NCBI RefSeq assembly: GCF_902459465.1
Contig: NC_047063.1
Location: 22,196,001 to 22,260,000 of the forward strand
DNA: 64,000 nt
DNA from: Asterias rubens
Lineage: Eukaryota
Direction: 5' to 3'
The notes below the pieces were generated by a model. It had not been told where the DNA came from and searched no databases. It saw nothing but the letters and a program-made list of their open reading frames with translations. Shown piece after piece: positions 10,093 to 35,262 of the stretch. Position numbers and translations under genes: made by a program. How positions within the stretch are numbered: position 1 is the first letter of the stretch; the number at the start of each line of letters is the position of its first letter.

Positions 10093-11192
10093 TTTGATTC
10101 TTTTAAATGTTGTTGGTTGTTTTTAATGGACTGTAATTAATGTAGTAAATGGACTTTTAGACAAATAATGTTTCTACCATTCAAAATTACTAAGCAAGCC
10201 TATACGTATTGGAACATTTTACCCAGACAAAAACAAACATTTGAACAGTTGTTTCCTTCGGTGGTCGCCGCGCGGCATCTCAGATGTTCCAACGTTTCTC
10301 GGATCGATGATCAATTCGGTATAGATATAAATAAGTTTATAATACAAACATAAGAACGTTATAGGATCAGATAAAATTTAAAACAAATCTACAAAAATCA
10401 GGCCTACTAAATAAACAGGTAAAAGGAAGAAAAAATCAGAATGAAAGAAAAATTCCAACCCACAAGGAATCACATCTAAAAAAAAATGGTAAGTTAAAAC
10501 TTTCACGAATTAGGTGTGAAAGCTGTTTTATTTGTACCCGAATCTATCATAAATAACCTAACTTATACACACGGGGTAAAAAAAAACAAAACAAAAAAAA
10601 CCCGTAAATAATAATACTGGACTCCCTGTTTAAAAACATTTCTTTAAACCATTCTCTTTTCAAATTGATACATCACGACTTTTAGAAGTAAGTTTTAGTT
10701 GACAAAATGGCGGAGAGAAGAAAAATAACCCCAAAAGTATCTCGCAAAAGGTTTGGGCTATAAGTGGCGCGAATCTACAGGTTTGGGCTATAAATGTGTA
10801 AAACTCAAATTCACTTCAAATTGCTGCACAGCTCTGTTGCTGCCACACAATGCCCCACGGGCATATGACTGTGAATAGGGCATACAAAGCAAAATATATA
10901 CAACTGTTATCCAAAAGGGTATTTTACATACAATTTTGACACACCAATTGTCCAATGTACACAAAATCCCTGTAAACTACATCACAGCCCAACGCATATC
11001 CTTTGTATTTTTAAAACCATTGGAGCATACAGTGGGCGTGGCTTATGCTGGCTTTAAAGTCATGTTTACACAAACGGGAGAACATTTTACTGCCATTTCA
11101 TTACATTGTGTATTTCCATTTTATCAGTTTAAGTTTAAACTTCATTACATGCTATATATACAAGATATATAATGGCAGTGTCAATGTTAATC

Positions 11193-25500: not shown

Positions 25501-28500
25501 TCAGTCCGATTCGTCTGATTCATCAGATCCTGATGCAGACTCTTCATCCTCATCAGTCTGACTTCCTGACCTTTCAGAATGGAGTACCTCCCGGTACTGC
25601 TCCTTCCATGTGCTCATCTCTGTGTTGTCTCCGTACATCTAGCAAGGAAATAGTAACAATAGTATGATAGAGTATAAAACATTGTGAGAAACGGCTCCCT
25701 CTGAAGTAATGTAGTTTTCGAGAAAGAAGCCATTTTCCACGAATTTGACTTCGAGACCTCAGATTTAGAATTTGAGGTCTCGAAATCAAGCATCTGAAAG
25801 CGCACAACTTCGTGTGACAAGGGTGTTTTTTCTTTCGTTAATATCTCGCAACTTTGACAACCGATTGAGGACAAATTTTATGCATATGTTGAAATACACT
25901 AACTGTGAAGACTAGTCTTTGACAATTACCAATAGTGTCCAGTGTCTTTACACTGAGAAATCACATCCCTGTTGGACTGGTCTCCCTGCACGGTTTGAAG
26001 GGTGGATACAGAGAACAGCTGTTGTCCAATGATCTGCCTCCCTTTTATGAGTGTGACGTCATATGCAATGGGTCTATAGTTCAAATTTGTTGTATTTATA
26101 TTCATATTTAAATTTATATTTTTACATAGTTTTTAACGATTCCTGTAAGTGGCGGCTTTCCGCTGTTGGATATCAATAAATAAAAAAAATAAAAAAAATA
26201 ATTAATCGGGAAACACTCACCTTACAGACAAACTCCAGGACACTTCTCATAGTGACCTCTGCATTGGCTCGGAGACCCCATTTAAACTGATACAATGCAG
26301 GGTCTGTGTTGGGTATCTTACTGTAGTCTAAATACCTGGGGGGAGGGAGGTTCAGACAAAGAAAATAACATTGAACATAAATAAGGGAATAAAAGGGTAG
26401 CGACGAAGTCTTGACCTCTGCATTGGCTCGGAGACCCCATTTAAACTGATACAATGCAGGGTCTGTGTTGGGTATCTTACTGTAGTCTAAATACCTGGGG
26501 TGGGGGGGGGGTGGGGGATGGTTCAGACAAAGAAAATAACATTGAACATAAATAAGGGAATAAAAGGGTAGCGATGAAGTCTTGACCTCAGCATTGGCTC
26601 GGAGACCCCATTTAAACTGATACAATGCAGGGTCTGTGTTGGGTATCTTACTGTAGTCTAAATACCTGGGGTGGGGGGGGGGGGTGGGGGATGGTTCAGA
26701 CAAAGAAAATAACATTGAACATAAATAAGGGAATAAAAGGGTAGCGACGAAGTCTTGACCTCTGCATTGGCTTGGAGACCCCATTTAAACTGATACAATG
26801 CAGGGTCTGTGTTGGGTATCTTACTGTAGTCTAAATACCTGGGGTGGGGGATGGTTCAGACAAAGAAAATAACATTGAACATAAATAAGGGAATAAAAGG
26901 GTAGCGACGAAGTCTTGACCTCAGCATTGGCTCGCAGACCCCATTTAAACTGATACAATGCAGGGTCTGTGTTGGGTATCTTACTGTTGTCTAAATACCT
27001 GGGGTGGGGGATGGTTCAGACAAAGAAAATAACATTGAACATAAATAAGGGAATAAAAGGGTAGCGACGAAGTCTTGACCTCTGCATTGGCTCGGAGACC
27101 CCATTTAAACTGATACAATGCAGGGTCTGTGTTGGGTATCTTACTGTAGTCTAAATACCTGGGGGAGGGAGGTTCAGACAAAGAAAATAACATTGAACAT
27201 AAATAAGGGAATAAAAGGGTAGCGACGAAGTCTTGACCTCTGCATTGGCTTGGAGACCCCATTTAAACTGATACAATGCAGGGTCTGTGTTGGGTATCTT
27301 ACTGTAGTCTAAATACCTGGGGTGGGGGGGGGGGGTTCAGACAAAGAAAATAACATTGAACATAAATGAGATATAATTGCAAATTGAAAATGGGAAACAA
27401 TCAGACAGGCAAACTTTATGGTCAGTGAGTTTTGTGGTCAGGTAAAAAGCAGTTAAGTACCCAGATGACTACTGAAGACACTGGACACTATTGGTAGTTG
27501 TCAAAGACCAGTCTTCTCACTTCATCTCAACATATGCATTAAATAACAAACCTGTTTAAATTTGAGCTCAATTTGTCGTCGAAGTTGCAATAAAGAAATA
27601 CAAGAAAAAACAACATCGTCACAAGAAGTTGTGTGCGTTTAAATGGTTGATTTCGAGACCTCAACTTCTCAATCTGATGTCTCAAAATCAAATTCGTGAA
27701 AAATTACTTCTTTCTCGAAAACCATGTCACTTCTGAGGGAGCCGTTTCTCACAATGTTTTATACCATCAACCTCTCCCCGTTACTCGTCACCAAGTAAGT
27801 TTTATGCTCATAAAAAAAACCCACAAAAACAAATGAACAATTGCATCTGGATTATTTTTAAAACCTCAATTCTCCCACCCCAAGTCTGGAGGGGAAAGCA
27901 AATGCTACTCAAAACAAGACTCAAACTGGTCCCAATTTCATAAATATTTTAAGCAGAAAAAGCAAAAAAAAAAAAAGGTTGGGGCACCAGTTGCATCAAG
28001 TGACTTGGGTACAAAGTGACCGACATTCGGTTAGTGATTTAGAATTCAGGGGGTTATGGGTTCAAATCCAACCCAAGTGTTATGCCTGCATATTATCCCC
28101 CATAGGACTAGGCGGTAAAACCAAAGTATTGAATTTATTATGACTTACAATTGCTTTGAAGCAAACTCGGATGTCACCAGTTTCTTGAGATCACCAAACA
28201 ATTCATGGTTCTTTCTGAAAAACATCAACAGACCGTCAAGAATATCATCAGTCAGCTAACAGGTTATTACATTTCTGACAGTTGAATGGGCAGTGAATTA
28301 GAAGGAAAATTAGTTATCAGCATACAAATCAGCTGTGCAGAATGACTTGGTGGTTATATACATGGTGTATAAGGCAGGGCGTGGCCAAAATATGCCATCT
28401 GCGTACCGACAGACACGGCAAAACTTCTTATTTGATCTTACAAGAGTCACTTAATCATGAAGACCAATGCAGAACCAAACCATTACAAAAATAGCTTGAG

Positions 28501-31500
28501 TCACCTGGAAGTGGTATTTTGTCAAAATAAAGCTTTTGTCACTAACATAAAGTGTGTTTTGATGAGTGGAATGTGAATGACAGTTAACTAAGATTCTAAA
28601 AAATTAGTTCTTATCTTATTTACAAGTTTAAGAGTAGGCCCCGACCCTAGAGGACGCTGTTCGTGACGTCAATCGAGGCGCAATATTTGAAGAGAAAATG
28701 CTGCACAGCACTGAAAAAGACAACGGACCGGACCACTAGGCACTATTGCTCTTGTGAGTCTGACCAGCCATGCAGACTGACCCCATCTTCAGTTGTTTTA
28801 CTGCATCCTGCAGCAATACACTTGGCCGGCATTGCCGGAAAAATGCAAGAAAACAACTTTTTTCGAAAGGTACAAACTCACGACTTCGACTTGTATGTAC
28901 TTTGCACGTGTGTTTACTCTACGCATCACGGCAAACTCTACCTCGATTGACGTCACAAAAGGGGTAGGCGGAGTCAACCCCCTAATAACTTTATCTATTT
29001 TTCAAACATATAAATCGTCTACAAAATTGTTTTATTGTTACTCAACATATACTCTTATGTTTGAAAAAACAAAAATTATTATTCCAGGTGACTTTAAGAA
29101 ATCACTGTGCAGGGTTTTCCAGAGCAATTTCTCCACACAGAAATTTGACCTCTTGTTTTCCATTCCACAGCAGCAAGTACGACCTACACCATAAGGGTAT
29201 TAACGATGTAATAATAATATATAAACTATGAGAATATATCATCAAAGTGTAATCCTAAGTGTGAAAACAAAGTTAATAAACACGGGTCAACGTCTGTTGG
29301 TATCCCTCCCAATGTTGTAAACAAGCAGACTTTGTGTCTTGTAAGACTATCCTTCAAAACCACAGTACATGACACTAAATGGGAAATCAGGTTGTATGAG
29401 GGATATGTCATAGAAAAAATTGAGATCCTATGAAATCCAAGCTTTTGTTACGTAACAATAATAATGAAACTCACTCTTCTTGTCGAAGGCCCAACTTCTC
29501 CAGTGTGTGCCAAAGGACAACTGCAAACAAAAATAAAAAATTGAAAATCCATCAATCACATGTGTATTGAAGTAGGTCAGGTTACTCCCAGGCCGTGTTC
29601 GGCCGCTAAGCATTTTGGTACAAGCCGCTTCTGGTTGCTTTTGTCTCTTGCATTGTTGTACTCTCCTGCAAGCTTTGATGCTGTCTTGGGGAGGGTGGGT
29701 GGCAAATTCAGTTTGTGCTCTGTGACTGTGCTGTCAAGTTGGGCTTATCAGATGATGATAATGTCAATTTTTCCTGAGATAAATTGGAAGCTCCATCCCT
29801 CTTATAGCTGGCAGTGCTCTCTAGAACCCTGTCAGATTTGTTGCAATGACTACTGTTACCCTGTTCCAAACCTGAACAGCTCTTGGGAAAGGGCTACAGA
29901 GGTAGCAGTCAACTCTGGCAAATGGTTGCCCATTTGTGAGACTATGTTGATTGGCCTGGTTGCGTCGACTTGGTCGTCTGATTTTTACAGGGTTAAGATC
30001 AATCTTCAAGCCTGGACTTTCCTCTTTGAGAGGGCAATGCCATTTCATTTGGTTAAGGACACTTCCATCGGAAAATCTTAAAGTCTATGGGAAACTTTTG
30101 AAGGGGCACCAAGGCCAGGACGAGGGGCAACAGAGGCAATGTTACTTACCTTCAGTGAGAACTCCTCCATTCATGAAGATGAGGCTCAGTATCACCAGAA
30201 GGAGACCAACCTTGGGATCTTCAGAGGAACTGTACAGAAGAGAAAAACAGAAACACTGATCAGGGCTGGCATTAGGGGTAAAATTCCACACCAACGCTGC
30301 GCTTGTAGTAGACATTCAGACGTTCAAGACATAGAATCCAATTGGGTCCAATTTCATTAAGCCTGTAGTAAGCACAAAACACTTGCTTAGCAAATAAAGG
30401 TTACCCGCTAAAACATTAGAAAGTTACAATTGCTGCGACTTGTACCTTGATCATTTTTTGCTTAGCCAAGAACTTTGCTAAGCTGAATTTTCTGCTTAAC
30501 AGCTTTTTGTAATTGGGCCTAAGAGGATCCAAGTTTAATACCTGTCTATGAAGTCTCCTTGTGCTTCTGTCTCTATTCTGTTCAGAAGTATGTACATCTT
30601 TGTTGAGCTTTTTCCAGTTTTATGTACCAACTCCACAAGGTCCAAACCAAATGCCTGTAATTTTGGGATAGAACTAAGTTGTTTAAGGTTATTAAGCAGA
30701 TATTATGAGTTTCTGATTGCTTTGTATGCAGTTGAATTTCATCAATTTAGGCAAGATTTGAAACTGCATGGTGGGAATTATACAACAAACACTTTGTACA
30801 TGAGTATGATTTGAAACTTTGCATGATGGAGATACAATTTAATAAGGTTTACTGTAACACCATGTACATGAGTAGGATTTGAAACTTTGCATGGTGGATA
30901 CAATCTAGTAAGGTTTGCTGCAACACAGTGTACATGAGTAGGATTTGAAACTTTGCATGGTGGAGATACAATCTAGTAAGGTTTGCAGTAACACCATGTA
31001 CATGAGTAAGATTTGAAACTTTGCATGGTGGAGATGCAATCTAGTAAGGTTTGCAGTAACACCATGTACATGAGTAGGATTGAAACTTCGCATGACGGAG
31101 ATACAATCTAATAAGGTTTGCAGTAACACCATGTACATGAGTAGGATTTGAAACTTTGTATGGTGGAGATACATCTAGTAAGGTTTGTGGTAACACCATG
31201 TACATGAGTAGGATTGAAACTTTGCATGGTGGAGATACAATCTATAGGTTTGCAGTAACACCATGTACATGAGTAGGATTTGAAACTTTGCATGGTGGAG
31301 ATACAATCTATAGGTTTGCAGTAACACCATGTACATGAGTAGGATTTGAAACTTTGCATGGTGGAGATACAATCTAGTAAGGTTTGCAGTAACACCATGT
31401 ACATGAGTAGGATTGAAACTTTGCATGGTGGAGATACAATCTATAGGTTTGCAGTAACACCATGTACATGAGTAGGATTTGAAATTTTGCATGGTGGAGA

Positions 31501-34500
31501 TACAATCTTGTAAGGTTTGCAGTAACACCATGTACATGAGTAGGATGTGAAACTTTGCATGGTGGAGATACAATCTAGTAAGGTTTGCAGTAACACCATG
31601 TACATGAGTAGGATTTGAAACTTTGCATGGTGGAGATACAATCTAGTAAGGTTTGCAGTAACACCATGTACATGAGTAGGATTTGAAACTTTGCATGGTG
31701 GAGATACAATCTAGTAAGGTTTGCAGTAACACCATGTACATGAGTAGGATTTGAAACTTTGCATGGTGGAGATACAATCTAGTAAGGTTTGCAGTAACAC
31801 CATGTACATGAGTAGGATTTGAAACTTTGCATGGTGGAGATACAATCTAGTAAGGTTTGCAGTAACACCATGTACATGAGTAGGATTTGAAACTTTGCAT
31901 GGTGGAGATACAATCTAGTAAGGTTTGCAGTAACACCATGTACATGAGTAGGATTTGAAACTTTGCATGGTGGAGATACAATCTAGTAAGGTTTGCAGTA
32001 ACACCATGTACATGAGTAGGATTTGAAACTTTGCATGGTGGAGATACAATCTAGTAAGGTTTGCAGTAACACCATGTACATGAGTAGGATTTTAAACTTA
32101 GCATGGTGGAGATACAATCTAGTAATGTTTGTGGTAACACCATGTATATGAGTAGGATTTGAAACTTTGCATGGTGGAGATCAAATAATAAAAAAAATAA
32201 AAAATAAAACCAAGGTTTTAAAATGGTTCTGATTTTACCATCTTGAGCTTCCTCTTGGTTCTATCCAGAACGTGCGGCAAAATTTTGCGATACTCGGCCT
32301 TCAATACATGCTTGGTAATATCTGAAAAAAAAATTATTATATATTTTTGGTAATGACACCAAGGATGCCTCGTAAGTGAAATTAATTGCTGTAGCTTGCA
32401 AGCCTAATGGAACCTGTAAACAAGGCTGCTTGCTGTGTCAACCAGAAACACTGAGTGTTAACCCGTACTCTTCCACGGCAAGTGTTCAGGATTCTTTTCC
32501 TTTAGACAGCACCATGTGATGGTTTACAGGCGCTGTGGCGCAATATGTAGCCAATCAAATTAGAAACCCTAGGGCGAACCTTTTCTCTTTACAAGTGCAC
32601 TGGGTGCTTGTATGTGCATTCACAACACACATTCAAAGGATGCAGCAATAATATAGTAAAGTGTCTTGCTCAAGGACACAAGTGTCATGACTGGGACTCA
32701 AACCCACACTCTGCTGATAATTAACACCAGAGCCACACCAATTCCAAAGTCTATTCTACGCTATGCTTCATCAAAAACATGACAAAATACGAAGAGACTG
32801 GGGGGGGTTGTCTATGACATCACTTACCTCCCCTCTTTATTGGGATTTTCTTTTGTTCCATTATCAGCATGTATTGTACCAACTCACCAACCTTCAAAAC
32901 AGAATGGTAGAAAACGAAGAGCACTGAACATTAAATAACCCAAATGAATTCAGCAAAGCTTAACCATACAATATGATGAATATATGTCAACAGGAGTTTT
33001 CTTCGTATCGCCATTCTCTCTTCGCGGCCGGCCAACAGTAGCTATGCCAATATTGTATCAAGCTATACATAACGTACCAATTAACACAAAATCATCCGCT
33101 AAGACGAGCCTCATACCGATCGCAAGTTAGGAGAATGATGATTCTTGGCGCAGAATTCGGCGGTAAGCAGGGCCATGAGGCCCGTCCAAGTGGGTCCAGT
33201 GATTACTTCGAGACAAGGGCCCAAGTTCATAAAGCCTGTAAGCACAAAAACTTGCTAAGCAGAAACTACTATCGCTTAGCAGAAACAGGTTACCTGCCAA
33301 AACTACATTAAGATGTTATTGCTGTGACTGATGCCCCACTACATTTTTGTTAAGCAAAGAAATTTGTTATGTAGTATTTTTTGCTTAACAGCTTTATGAA
33401 ATTGGGCCCTGGAAAGGTTAATTGATTAAAGGCAGTGGACACTATTGGTAATTACTCAAAATAATTAATAGCATAAAACTTACTTGGTAACGAGAAATGG
33501 GGAGAGGTTGATAGTATAAAACATAGTGAGAAACCGCTCCCTCTGAAGTGGAGTAGTTTTCAAGAAAGTAGTAATTTTCCACAAATTTGATTTTGAGACC
33601 TCAGATTTAGAATTTGAGGTCTCGAAATCAAGCATCTAAAAGCACACAACTTCGTGTGACAAGGGTGTTTTTTTTCCCATTATTATCTCGCAACTTCGAC
33701 GACCAATTGAGCTCAAATTTTCAAAGGTTTGTTATTTTAAGTTGAGATACACCAAGTGAGAATACTGGTCTTTGACAATTACCAATAGTGTCCAGTGTCT
33801 TTAAGGAGTGTTTATTGCCAAGATCTATGATGGTGTTGTGATGCTGCTCCTCAGAACAATACCATTTGTACGAATTACTCAATACAAAGACTCACGGAAG
33901 ACGATTTGTTGTTAACTTCTTCTGCATGCAGTCTATTTATTTCTACATATGTCTTTTAACATAGAAGTGCACCCTAAGGTGCCCTAGATAAGAATAACTC
34001 ATTTACTTTCCCCATCCCTCTTTTATTTCCCTTCAACTCCTTGAGGAGTGGTCATTCCTGGAATGAGGCAAGAACCACATCCTTGAGTCCAGGTAGGTCA
34101 CTGACCACTGACCTCCACACCCACCTCAGTATTCTAGGAATACCCATTACTACCACAATGACCTTCTCACCACCAGGCTCTGGGTGAAAGTTCGGTCATG
34201 ACTAATAATGACATCACAGATGGACTGACCTTCCTTTCGATGAGTTCTGGCGTGAGTTTGGCGACTGCTCTTTCAGCTTGAGTCATGCTCTGAGTCTGTT
34301 GCTGGCTTTGACTGGCGTCCATATCCTCCTCTCCCTGTGCAAAAACAACGATCAAAACAAACTTATATCGACACAGGGAATTGCGTTTGTACAAAAAATA
34401 TATACAAACCTGAAAATGGGGACAACTATCAGAGACTGTAGCCCATTTTCAGTTTTTTTGTGTATGTGTGTCTGTGCATCTCTTCATGGACCTGAGCTTC

Positions 34501-35262
34501 TATCTTAACCTACAGCTTACATTTGTCAAGAAAAAATTATTATAATTTTTGTCTTCAAGTCTAAATCTTTGTACCAAAAGAATGGAGTTCAAATGTCAAA
34601 TTTTGAGTCGCACAAATATCTTTCAATCCTGCAGAGTATCACACATATTAAACAGAAGAGCGAAAAAGCTGTATTCTCATTCTGAAATAGTCTCTTCTCA
34701 TTTTGATTCTGGGGTGTATTTCATAAAGAGTTAAGACTAGTCTTGTTTCGAGTTAGGAGTTACTCGTCCTAACTTAGGACTAGCCTTTAGTTTTTAATAT
34801 CTCCTAGCACTAGTCCTAAGTTAGGACTAGTCCTAAGTTAGGACTAGCCCTAACTCTTTGTGAAATCGACCCCTGGTCTTTCAATGGAATCCTGGTCAAG
34901 TACCGGTAAAAAACCCGAGCTGCAAGGGGTGGATTTCGCAAAGAATTAAGACTAGTCTTATTTCGAGTTAGGGCGACTTACTCGTCCACACTTGAGACTA
35001 TAGCCATACGTTTTTAATATCTCCTAGGACTAGTCCTAAGTTAGGACTAGTGCTAACTATTTGTAAAATCGACCCCTGGCTGCAGGCTTGTGGATTTCCC
35101 CCCAAAGACAAGCCCCGGCGGTGCTAAAAAATAAACTGCTTGACATACCGAGCTGGATGCTGATGATGACTCTACCACAGCAGCCCTTCCTTTTTGCCGT
35201 CCCTTCTTTGGTTGTGACTTCTGCCTTTGGGACTGGCTCGCTCCTGCTGCTCCACGAGGCAT
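25501..35262 (-). CDS. NSMCE3: MAGE-domain protein, NSE3/NSMCE3 (SMC5/6 subunit)-like, 307 aa
   Basis: Join (minus): 35262-35149, 34334-34230, 32891-32828, 32321-32239, 30654-30542, 30229-30150, 29520-29475, 28214-28149, 26335-26221, 25638-25501. GT-AG, phases agree, 924 nt. MAGE hallmarks: [113 protein letters not shown]. Confidence 0.92.
26221..27367 (-). repeat. 7-copy ~158-173 bp tandem repeat spanning the intron 8/exon 9 junction of NSMCE3
   Basis: Identical CAG|GTATTTAGAC acceptors with exon starts at 27316, 27158, 26998, 26838, 26665, 26494 and 26335. Only the last copy runs on to the donor at 26221. Confidence 0.97.
28497..29098. mobile_element. ~600-bp TIR element (AGTCACCTGGAA termini), NSMCE3 intron 7
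   Basis: GAGTCACCTGGAA at ~28498 and TTCCAGGTGACTTTAA at ~29083-29098; no ORF. Confidence 0.55.
30780..32185. repeat. 68-bp minisatellite, ~20 copies, in NSMCE3 intron 4
   Basis: Unit CATGTACATGAGTAGGATTTGAAACTTTGCATGGTGGAGATACAATCTAGTAAGGTTTGCAGTAACAC; period 68 (e.g. 31561 to 31629). Copies at ~31560-32090 look identical. Confidence 0.97.
33426..33804 (+). mobile_element. K1 MITE, complete copy (NSMCE3 intron 2)
   Basis: TTAA at both ends, TIRs. Confidence 0.85.
34711..35076. mobile_element. Two adjacent palindromic MITEs (GGGGT.GATTTCACAAAGAGTTA termini); relatives at ~1499-1640 and ~8285-8580
   Basis: 34711-34873 and 34926-35076, rich in CCTAAGTTAGG/GACTAGTC palindromes. Confidence 0.75.

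What the first reader, a model, noticed from the sequence alone, without database searches (positions are those of the whole stretch)
26221..27367. NSE3/MAGE exon whose 3' splice site and first ~83 nt are tandemly multiplied seven times
Seen: seven near-identical units, each with the same polypyrimidine tract, CAG|G acceptor and the codons YLDYSKIPNTDPALYQFKWGLRANAEV (exon starts 27316, 27158, 26998, 26838, 26665, 26494, 26335). Only the last unit continues to TMRSVLEFVCK and a GT donor (26221). The spliceosome therefore has seven equivalent acceptors for one donor. Acceptors 26494 (+159 nt) and 26665 (+330 nt) keep the frame with no stop (the 203-aa ORF in the track). They would add one or two extra copies of this C-terminal MAGE-domain segment, each followed by a hydrophobic spacer (KTSSLPFYSLIYVQCYFLCL). 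The four upstream acceptors hit a frameshift and stop, so they would be NMD targets. Known: NSE3 is an essential SMC5/6 subunit. Inference: a repeat-built splicing rheostat and isoform generator in an essential gene, or a strong natural test of exon definition.
Basis: partly seen in the sequence, partly recalled or inferred. Interest (0 to 1): 0.8.

Follow-up and report, generated by a model that had tools for sequence, protein, structure and literature searches.

The report
Seven-fold repeated splice acceptor in starfish NSE3
In the common starfish, the start of one exon of the essential NSMCE3 gene is repeated seven times with its splice acceptor; the repeat began beside a fragment of a mobile element, and the RNA assemblies examined show only the last copy spliced, so it looks like a tolerated accident and not a regulator.

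Summary
Window 27366-26222 (minus strand) holds seven 158-173-nt tandem units. Each has a C-rich polypyrimidine tract, a CAG|G acceptor and the first 83 nt of coding exon 9 of Asterias rubens NSMCE3 (XP_033647674.1).

New here: the 30-nt spacer between units is the exact 3' end of a dispersed non-autonomous element with at least 1,291 genome copies. Each unit is therefore a 131-141-nt flanking direct repeat plus a 28-31-nt transposon end. That is the layout of a 5'-truncated insertion with a very long target-site duplication.

Asterias amurensis has the same junction but only two units. Its upstream unit carries a stop codon, and NCBI isoform X2 ends exactly there. Acanthaster planci has one copy. 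A. rubens therefore expanded from two units to seven.

RNA-like contigs from three studies join exon 8 only to the last acceptor (26335). Nine RNA-like runs hold 0.11 of the array's sampled words; mature mRNA alone predicts 0.123. The two in-frame units match chance (2 of 6).

Verdict: a real, probably neutral, transposon-seeded repeat of a splice site. A rheostat or isoform-generator role is unsupported. It is still a good natural test of exon definition. Copy number and minor isoforms remain unmeasured.

The parts
25501..35262 (-). Coding part of the Asterias rubens NSMCE3/NSE3 gene. Ten coding exons: 35262-35149, 34334-34230, 32891-32828, 32321-32239, 30654-30542, 30229-30150, 29520-29475, 28214-28149, 26335-26221, 25638-25501.
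   Evidence: This is the only AG/GT-bounded model found that translates exactly to XP_033647674.1 (P0001, 307 aa). The MAGE homology domain covers residues 77-252, E = 3.8e-30.
28149..28214 (-). Coding exon 8 (66 nt). Its donor (gtaagt) is the single 5' splice site facing the seven acceptors. The intron is phase 2: TT|G encodes Leu.
   Evidence: RNA contigs join it to 26335.
26222..27366 (-). Tandem array of seven units. Each unit has 46-58 nt of intron end (possible branch sites, C-rich tract, CAG), the first 83 nt of exon 9, and a 30-nt spacer.
26221..26335 (-). Functional coding exon 9 (115 nt), which is unit 7 plus the unique 32-nt exon end. It encodes residues 225-262, the end of the MAGE domain.
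   Evidence: Annotated protein. RNA-like contigs X1 record 1, X10 record 7 and X9 record 21.
26382..26411 (-). Spacer AGACTTCGTCGCTACCCTTTTATTCCCTTA, which is the 3' terminus of a dispersed element. Other copies lie at 26553-26582, 26726-26755, 26886-26915, 27046-27075 and 27204-27233.
   Evidence: 632 genome matches to the array variant and 1,291 to the family consensus, with 0 for the reversed control. In all 56 sampled copies, similarity to other copies ends at this terminus.
26494..26494 (-). Decoy acceptor of unit 6. Its use would add 159 nt (53 aa) in frame.
   Evidence: No contig shows it.
26665..26665 (-). Decoy acceptor of unit 5. Its use would add 330 nt (110 aa) in frame.
26838..27316 (-). 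Decoy acceptors of units 4, 3, 2 and 1 (26838, 26998, 27158, 27316). Use of any gives a premature stop 437-930 nt upstream of the last exon junction.
25501..25638 (-). Last coding exon (acidic C-terminal tail and stop codon).

Best explanation
The array is a by-product of a mobile-element accident, and the spliceosome bypasses it.

Step 1 (inferred from anatomy). Before A. rubens and A. amurensis split, the last 28-31 nt of a dispersed non-autonomous element were inserted about 50 nt upstream of the exon-9 acceptor. The insertion was flanked by a direct duplication of about 131 nt, from the end of the intron to exon nucleotide 83. This is the layout of a severely 5'-truncated insertion with a very long target-site duplication. 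Because the downstream copy stays joined to the rest of the exon, the gene remained intact.

Step 2 (inferred). In A. rubens, unequal exchange or replication slippage between the two direct repeats raised the number from two units to seven and kept them 96-100% alike.

Step 3 (shown at the level of assembled contigs). Exon 8 is spliced to the last acceptor (26335). The likely reason (inferred) is exon definition: only that acceptor lies 115 nt upstream of the one strong donor (26221).

Step 4 (predicted). Rare use of units 1-4 would give transcripts with a premature stop. Rare use of units 5 or 6 would give proteins with 110 or 53 extra residues at the end of the MAGE domain.
For: - Every spacer equals the exact 3' end of a family with at least 1,291 copies. 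The family's similarity stops at ...CCCTTA, and its usual 3' flank starts TT(T)A, as in the array (CCCTTA|TTTATG).
- The intron part of the unit is unique to the array.
- A. amurensis has the same junction and spacer but only two units. Its upstream copy differs from the downstream copy at 7 of 83 positions and carries a TAG stop.
- Acanthaster planci has one copy of the exon, with the same intron position.
- The A. rubens units differ from u7 at 0-3 of 83 positions, which suggests recent expansion or homogenisation.
- A 68-bp minisatellite in intron 4 of the same gene has 20.7 copies in A. rubens and 4.6 in A. amurensis, so repeat expansion is common at this locus.
- RNA-like contigs X1, X10 and X9 (three studies) join exon 8 to 26335, then 26221 to 25638, with one copy of the segment.
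- RNA-like runs hold 0.11 of the array's sampled words against 0.123 expected from mature mRNA. DNA runs hold 0.22-0.38.
- The NCBI model uses 26335.
- Small tandem duplications at L1 insertion sites are documented in human cells (PMC11702581).
Against: - The class of the element is unresolved. It has no poly(A) or simple-repeat tail, and no reverse-transcriptase partner was found.
- Element heads (1,837) outnumber tails (1,291). This is not the classic 5'-truncation signature.
- A target-site duplication of about 131 nt is far beyond the usual length.
- Contigs cannot measure minor isoforms, and nonsense-mediated decay would hide four of the six decoy products.
- RNA runs show unexplained depth of 200-700 in bins 27172-27315 and 26308-26451. 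I attribute this to transcripts of other copies of the element matching the spacer, but I could not check it.
- The NCBI isoform X2 of A. amurensis suggests that a decoy acceptor can be used.
Confidence: 0.68

Rival explanations
1. Functional splicing rheostat or isoform generator. The number of decoy acceptors tunes NSE3 output through unproductive splicing and decay. The two in-frame acceptors make longer NSE3 isoforms with a function.
For: All seven acceptors are intact, and no unit has an internal stop in the coding frame. The last two units are in frame. The A. amurensis isoform X2 indicates that a duplicated acceptor can be used.
Against: Only the last acceptor appears in contigs from three studies. 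The word share in RNA runs equals the expectation for mature mRNA alone. The in-frame fraction of 2 in 6 is the chance value and depends on unstable poly-C lengths. The extra peptide would be a translated transposon end plus polypyrimidine tract (KTSSLPFYSLIYVQCYFLCLN...), inserted at the end of the MAGE domain. The sister species manages with two units, one of them decayed. Intact units are explained by their youth.
Confidence: 0.05
2. Same structure, different origin. The first duplication arose by replication template switching or microhomology-mediated repair. The 30 nt were copied as filler from another copy of the element, and no insertion of an element took place.
For: One nucleotide (A) is shared at the exon/spacer junction. 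Several genomic copies of the element are followed by TTTAT, which could pair with the intron's TTTATG for the switch back. The element shows no clear retroposon hallmarks.
Against: The filler ends exactly at the element's terminus and sits in the orientation and position of a normal 3' insertion junction. A random copied piece would rarely do this.
Confidence: 0.2
3. The copy number is an assembly error. The duplication is real, but seven units overstates or understates the true array.
For: No long reads could be laid. DNA contigs hold only 0.22-0.38 of the array's words. Poly-C runs are error-prone.
Against: The units carry distinct substitutions and poly-C lengths in a non-periodic order. 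An independent metagenome contig matches the u2-u3 junction with one differing letter in 190 nt. Collapse of repeats in k=31 contigs explains the low word share.
Confidence: 0.08
4. Recursive splicing. Each acceptor is followed by GTATTT. After exon 8 is joined to an upstream unit, a weak 5' splice site (ATT|GTATTT) is regenerated, and the units are removed one by one until the last. The mature mRNA would look the same.
For: The sequence CAG|GTATTT is present in all seven units. The mature product is identical to direct use of unit 7.
Against: The regenerated site lacks G at -1 and at +5, so it is weak. No intermediates were seen in contigs.
Confidence: 0.03

Closest known systems
NSMCE3 / NSE3 (MAGE-G1), the MAGE-domain subunit of the SMC5/6 complex
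   Same: The gene is the A. rubens orthologue. It has the MAGE homology domain (E = 3.8e-30), 69-71% identity to the Acanthaster and Patiria NSMCE3 proteins, and the same intron position before YLDY.
   Different: No other orthologue examined has more than one copy of the exon start. Acanthaster has one; A. amurensis has two.
Retroelement insertions flanked by target-site duplications, and L1-associated small tandem duplications (PMC11702581)
   Same: A direct repeat flanks an element fragment that keeps its exact 3' end and lacks its 5' part. The fragment's 3' end abuts the downstream repeat copy.
   Different: The duplication is about 131 nt, against the 12-18 bp reported in that study. The element has no poly(A) tail and its class is unknown. 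The flanking repeat was later amplified to seven copies.
Minisatellite (VNTR) expansion by unequal exchange
   Same: Head-to-tail units of about 160 nt, 96-100% alike, with copy number differing between sister species. A second minisatellite lies in the same gene.
   Different: The unit contains a complete 3' splice site and 83 coding nucleotides of an essential gene.
Competition between duplicated splice sites in minigenes, and exon definition (classic work recalled from memory, not checked here)
   Same: Identical 3' splice sites compete in cis for one 5' splice site. The site that gives a normal-sized exon next to a strong donor wins.
   Different: This is a natural seven-fold case in a living genome, not a two-fold engineered construct.
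Helentron-associated interspersed elements, HINE / DINE-1-like (PMC4067079)
   Same: The element behind the spacer is non-autonomous. It has conserved ends, a variable middle with simple repeats, a palindrome near the 3' end, and T on both flanks.
   Different: No 13-bp subterminal inverted repeats were found. The palindrome is about 150 nt, not short. Membership is not established.

Membership tests
NSMCE3/NSE3 (MAGE family) | MAGE homology domain above the Pfam cut-off | tested here: met
   PF01454, residues 77-252, 105.6 bits against a cut-off of 25.
NSMCE3/NSE3 (MAGE family) | Orthology to named NSMCE3 proteins of other echinoderms, with shared exon structure | tested here: met
   Best hits are all named NSMCE3 homolog, at 47-71% identity. 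The same phase-2 intron precedes YLDY in Acanthaster.
NSMCE3/NSE3 (MAGE family) | Binding to NSE1/NSE4 and an essential role in SMC5/6 | not testable with these tools
   Assumed from orthology only.
5'-truncated retroelement insertion by target-primed reverse transcription | The element's 3' end is intact at the junction and its 5' part is missing | tested here: met
   Only the last 28-31 nt of an element of about 500 nt are present, ending at the family terminus.
5'-truncated retroelement insertion by target-primed reverse transcription | Flanking direct repeat (target-site duplication) | tested here: met
   A repeat of 131-141 nt on both sides in A. amurensis and A. rubens. It is unusually long.
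5'-truncated retroelement insertion by target-primed reverse transcription | The family shows retroposon hallmarks: poly(A) or simple-repeat tail, more tails than heads, variable 5' truncation | tested here: inconclusive
   15 of 56 sampled copies lack the head and have variable 5' ends. But there is no poly(A) tail, heads (1,837) outnumber tails (1,291), and no tRNA-like head was found in six of the eight copies scanned that carry the head.
5'-truncated retroelement insertion by target-primed reverse transcription | An autonomous partner that encodes reverse transcriptase and shares the tail | not tested
   Headless copies share only 50-130 nt with each other. No LINE partner was looked for genome-wide.
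Helentron-associated element (HINE) | Subterminal inverted repeats, a short 3' stem-loop and insertion at TT | tested here: inconclusive
   T flanks and a 3' palindrome are present. No subterminal inverted repeats link head and tail.
Regulated alternative 3' splice-site use (rheostat or isoform generator) | More than one acceptor used in mature RNA of this species | tested here: not met
   Only the 28149-to-26335 junction appears in contigs of three studies. Word share is 0.11 against 0.123 expected. Contigs cannot exclude rare isoforms.
Recursive splice site (ratchet point) | A 3' splice site directly followed by a consensus 5' splice site (AG|GTRAGT) | tested here: inconclusive
   The sequence is CAG|GTATTT. 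GT and +3A are present, but +4, +5 and the regenerated -1 do not fit the consensus.

The most novel reading that the evidence does not exclude
The seven-acceptor array is not inert. It acts on NSE3 expression as a set of decoys: a kinetic delay, unproductive splicing coupled to decay, or stepwise recursive removal. Its variable copy number and poly-C lengths would then make NSE3 dosage, or rare NSE3 isoforms with 53 or 110 extra residues, differ between individual starfish.
Probability: 0.06. Interest if true: 0.75.

Novelty: new variant of a known kind. Interest (0 to 1): 0.4.

Why it matters
- It is a clean natural experiment. Seven near-identical sets of polypyrimidine tract and acceptor, each with candidate branch sites, compete for one donor in an essential gene, and the assembled transcripts show only the one that makes a 115-nt exon. 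The sister species offers a two-copy comparison.
- It shows how a mobile-element insertion with a long flanking duplication can copy a splice site and part of an exon without breaking the gene, and then seed a minisatellite.
- Gene predictors and RNA aligners should treat this locus with care, because reads can map to any of the seven units.
- No evidence points to a new regulatory mechanism.

Tried and rejected
- **Pfam MAGE search of the whole genome in six frames.** It found nothing, even at this locus, so that tool cannot see short exons. I used the protein database instead.
- **Patiria miniata locus look-up.** Not on record.
- **Rfam scan of eight element copies.** It gave only a tRNA next to one copy, on the opposite strand, and a sub-threshold match to a plant MITE-derived miRNA hairpin. 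This was no help in classifying the element.
- **Simple MITE hypothesis.** Rejected. The left arm of the palindrome is not the element's end, because conserved sequence continues for another 300 nt.
- **Clear target-site duplications around full-length copies.** None were found by eye. Both flanks are simply TTTAAA-like.
- **Head versus tail counts as a test of 5' truncation.** They did not favour a retroposon.
- **THAP-like ORF at 28746-28877.** No Pfam support.
- **Earlier findings of this scan.** Nothing near this place or on this element.
- **Array similar to other sequence in the window.** Only poly-C matches.
- **Read laying.** It could be used once, and only on contigs, so neither junction counts nor copy number were obtained.
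Full report
**1. The observation**

On the minus strand, window 27366-26222 contains seven head-to-tail units of 158-173 nt. TRF reports period 160, 96% matches and score 1277. Each unit has three parts:
- 46-58 nt of intron end: TTTATGTTCAATGTTATTTTCTTTGTCTGAACC, a C-rich tract of variable length, then CAG.
- The first 83 nt of a coding exon, from GTATTTAGAC to GAGGTCA.
- In units 1-6, a 30-nt spacer, AGACTTCGTCGCTACCCTTTTATTCCCTTA.

Only unit 7 continues into the rest of the exon (CTATGAG...TGTAAG) and the donor gtgagt. The exon ends at 26221.

The units are not quite identical in coding sense. Unit 3 has Y to N, and units 1 and 4 have R to Q. Units 2, 6 and 7 are identical over the 83 nt.

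| Acceptor | Added length | Result |
|---|---|---|
| 26494 | +159 nt | In frame, no stop |
| 26665 | +330 nt | In frame, no stop |
| 26838, 26998, 27158, 27316 | longer | Stop 437-930 nt upstream of the last exon junction |

**2. Identity of the gene and genome**

The 40 residues encoded by the true exon matched one protein cluster at 100% identity: XP_033647674.1, 'non-structural maintenance of chromosomes element 3 homolog [Asterias rubens]', 307 aa. The window lies at 22.196-22.260 Mb of contig C2 in a 417.6-Mb assembly.

One model of ten coding exons with AG/GT borders reproduces that protein exactly. The array sits at coding exon 9. Pfam places the MAGE homology domain at residues 77-252 (E = 3.8e-30). 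The multiplied 27 codons are residues 225-251, the last part of that domain. The NCBI model uses the last acceptor and contains a single copy of the segment.

**3. Is the array real?**

- The intron part of the unit occurs only at these seven places in the genome.
- The units carry their own substitutions and poly-C lengths in a non-periodic order.
- A 190-nt contig from a marine metagenome (X14, record 19, 26971-27160) spans one unit-to-unit junction with one differing letter.
- Eight runs labelled DNA or of unknown kind (the labels are the tool's guess), from four studies, hold 0.22-0.38 of the array's sampled words.
- An independent assembly of A. amurensis has a two-unit version (section 5).

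The duplication is therefore real. The count of seven could not be verified, because only k=31 contigs were available.

**4. The spacer is the end of a mobile element (new finding)**

Read laying showed unexplained depth in two bins of the array in the RNA runs. That led me to search the genome for the 30-nt spacer.
- The array variant has 632 matches at up to 3 mismatches. The family consensus, AGAACTCGTCGCTACCCTTTTATTCCCTTA, has 1,291. The reversed control has none.
- In 56 sampled copies, similarity between copies always stops at ...CCCTTA. Beyond it the flanks are unrelated and usually begin TT(T)A. Similarity extends leftwards for 50 to about 540 nt.
- Full-length copies are about 480-540 nt. 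They have a conserved 86-nt head (TTCATAAATACCCCAGACAG...; 1,837 genome matches), a variable middle with CG/CA-rich simple sequence, and a palindrome of about 150 nt just before the 3' end.
- There are no terminal inverted repeats. No tRNA-like head was detected.
- 15 of the 56 copies lack the head and have variable 5' ends.

I could not assign the element to a class. It has some retroposon-like traits and some traits of Helentron-associated elements as described in PMC4067079. It fails clear tests for both.

**5. Origin and history**

Each array junction reads: exon nucleotide 83 | last 28-31 nt of the element | intron TTTATG.... The first two units therefore have the layout 'direct repeat - 5'-truncated element with intact 3' end - direct repeat'. 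This is the layout of a truncated insertion with a target-site duplication, except that the duplication is 131-141 nt long.

Because the downstream repeat copy stays contiguous with the rest of exon 9, the gene survived.

- A. amurensis (GCA_032118995.1, locus L008) has exactly this minimal form. It has two units at 10507 and 10669, with the same spacer (one substitution) and the same upstream intron.
- Its upstream unit differs from its downstream unit at 7 of 83 positions and contains TAC TAG.
- Acanthaster planci has one copy of the exon, with the same intron position.
- The event therefore predates the split of the two Asterias species, and A. rubens later expanded from two units to seven.
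- The A. rubens units differ from unit 7 at only 0-3 of 83 positions. Flanking non-coding sequence differs by about 3-5% between the species. This suggests recent expansion or homogenisation.
- The same gene's intron 4 holds a 68-bp minisatellite with 20.7 copies in A. rubens and 4.6 in A. amurensis. Tandem-repeat growth is thus ordinary at this locus.
- Small tandem duplications at L1 insertion sites have been reported in experimental human cells (PMC11702581). This gives a precedent for the class of event, though not for this element.
- A rival origin is template switching that copied 30 nt of an element as filler. It remains possible. It explains less well why the fragment ends exactly at the element's terminus.

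**6. Which acceptor is used?**

Only assembled contigs of public runs were available. Run identities are coded, and their RNA status is the tool's guess. The contigs themselves skip the introns, however.

| Run | Contig | Pieces laid on the window |
|---|---|---|
| X1 | 1,218 nt, depth 40 | 28214-28146, then 26332-26221, then 25638-25376 |
| X10 | 1,517 nt, depth 288 | Same three pieces |
| X9 | 416 nt, depth 72 | 26332-26221, then 25638-25365 |

These three runs come from three studies. The 112 nt after the junction run straight into the unique exon end. The transcripts therefore contain one copy of the segment, which means acceptor 26335 was used.

Bins 26740-27171 (units 2-4) have zero depth in all three runs.

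A k-mer argument points the same way. The array has 430 distinct 31-mers, and 53 of them (0.123) also occur in the mature mRNA. Nine RNA-like runs of the same coded organism hold 0.11 of the sampled array words. DNA runs hold 0.22-0.38.

No protein carrying the repeated segment appeared among the length-compatible candidates that the word-based search scored.

Limits:
- Contigs drop rare variants.
- Nonsense-mediated decay would remove four of the six decoy products.
- Depth of 200-700 in bins 27172-27315 and 26308-26451 of the RNA runs is unexplained. I think it comes from transcripts of other copies of the element that match the spacer, but I could not inspect those contigs.

**7. Evidence that a decoy can be used**

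The NCBI isoform X2 of A. amurensis (XP_071810356.1, 239 aa) ends ...YLDYSKIPNTDPALY. That is exactly the reading of the upstream duplicated unit up to its TAG. This is evidence at the annotation level only. The product is truncated and lacks the end of the MAGE domain.

**8. Function**

- The in-frame state of units 5 and 6 follows from unit lengths of 171 and 159 nt. Lengths modulo 3 across the array are 2,1,1,2,0,0, so two of six are in frame, which is the chance expectation. The lengths depend on poly-C runs.
- The open frame through the spacer is a single shared property of the unit.
- The extra peptide would be a translated transposon end plus polypyrimidine tract.
- I see no sign of selection for a rheostat or for new isoforms.

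The most likely reason the last acceptor wins is exon definition. It is the only acceptor within 115 nt of the strong donor at 26221, whereas units 6 to 1 would give exons of 274 to 1,096 nt. Each unit also contains GAG|GTCAAG, a poor donor. No contig shows it being used.

A speculative alternative is stepwise recursive removal through CAG|GTATTT. It cannot be excluded, but the regenerated site is weak.

**9. Verdict**

The best-supported reading is a transposon-seeded duplication of a splice acceptor and partial exon. A. rubens expanded it as a minisatellite, and splicing bypasses it.

The locus is a useful natural test of exon definition, and an example of how an insertion with a long flanking duplication can copy a splice site harmlessly. 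A regulatory role is possible but unsupported, at about 5%.

Noticed in passing
window 30788-32181 (intron 4 of the same gene); L008 6114-6533: A 68-bp minisatellite with 20.7 copies at 95% identity in A. rubens, against about 4.6 copies at the orthologous place in A. amurensis.
   Followed up: partly
genome-wide, e.g. L013 (G000:C7:13726692-13727921), L021, L023: An unclassified non-autonomous dispersed element of about 480-540 nt. It has a conserved 86-nt head (1,837 matches), a conserved tail (1,291 matches), a CG/CA-rich variable middle, a subterminal palindrome of about 150 nt, no terminal inverted repeats and TTTAAA-like flanks. Shorter derivatives with internal deletions, and copies lacking the head, also exist.
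   Followed up: partly
window 25588-26019 and 27460-27891 (introns 9 and 8): Copies of a very abundant dispersed repeat, translating to ...[26 protein letters not shown]... Further copies lie at about 24000, 33500, 40800 and 42300. RNA-like runs show summed contig depths of 10^5 to 10^6 here, so the family is widely transcribed.
   Followed up: no
window 26100-26210: Just downstream of the exon-9 donor, A. rubens has about 110 nt of T-rich and other sequence that A. amurensis lacks (compare L008 10800-10810).
   Followed up: no
window 27770-28175: RNA-like runs X9 and X10 contain low-depth contigs (4-6, against 72-288 for the mRNA) covering the 5' part of intron 8. X9's contig reaches into exon 8; X10's stops at 28100. 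These are pre-mRNA or retained intron.
   Followed up: no
L017 1043-1115: A tRNA gene (43 bits) lies about 40 nt from the 5' side of one copy of the element, on the opposite strand. This is probably coincidence.
   Followed up: no
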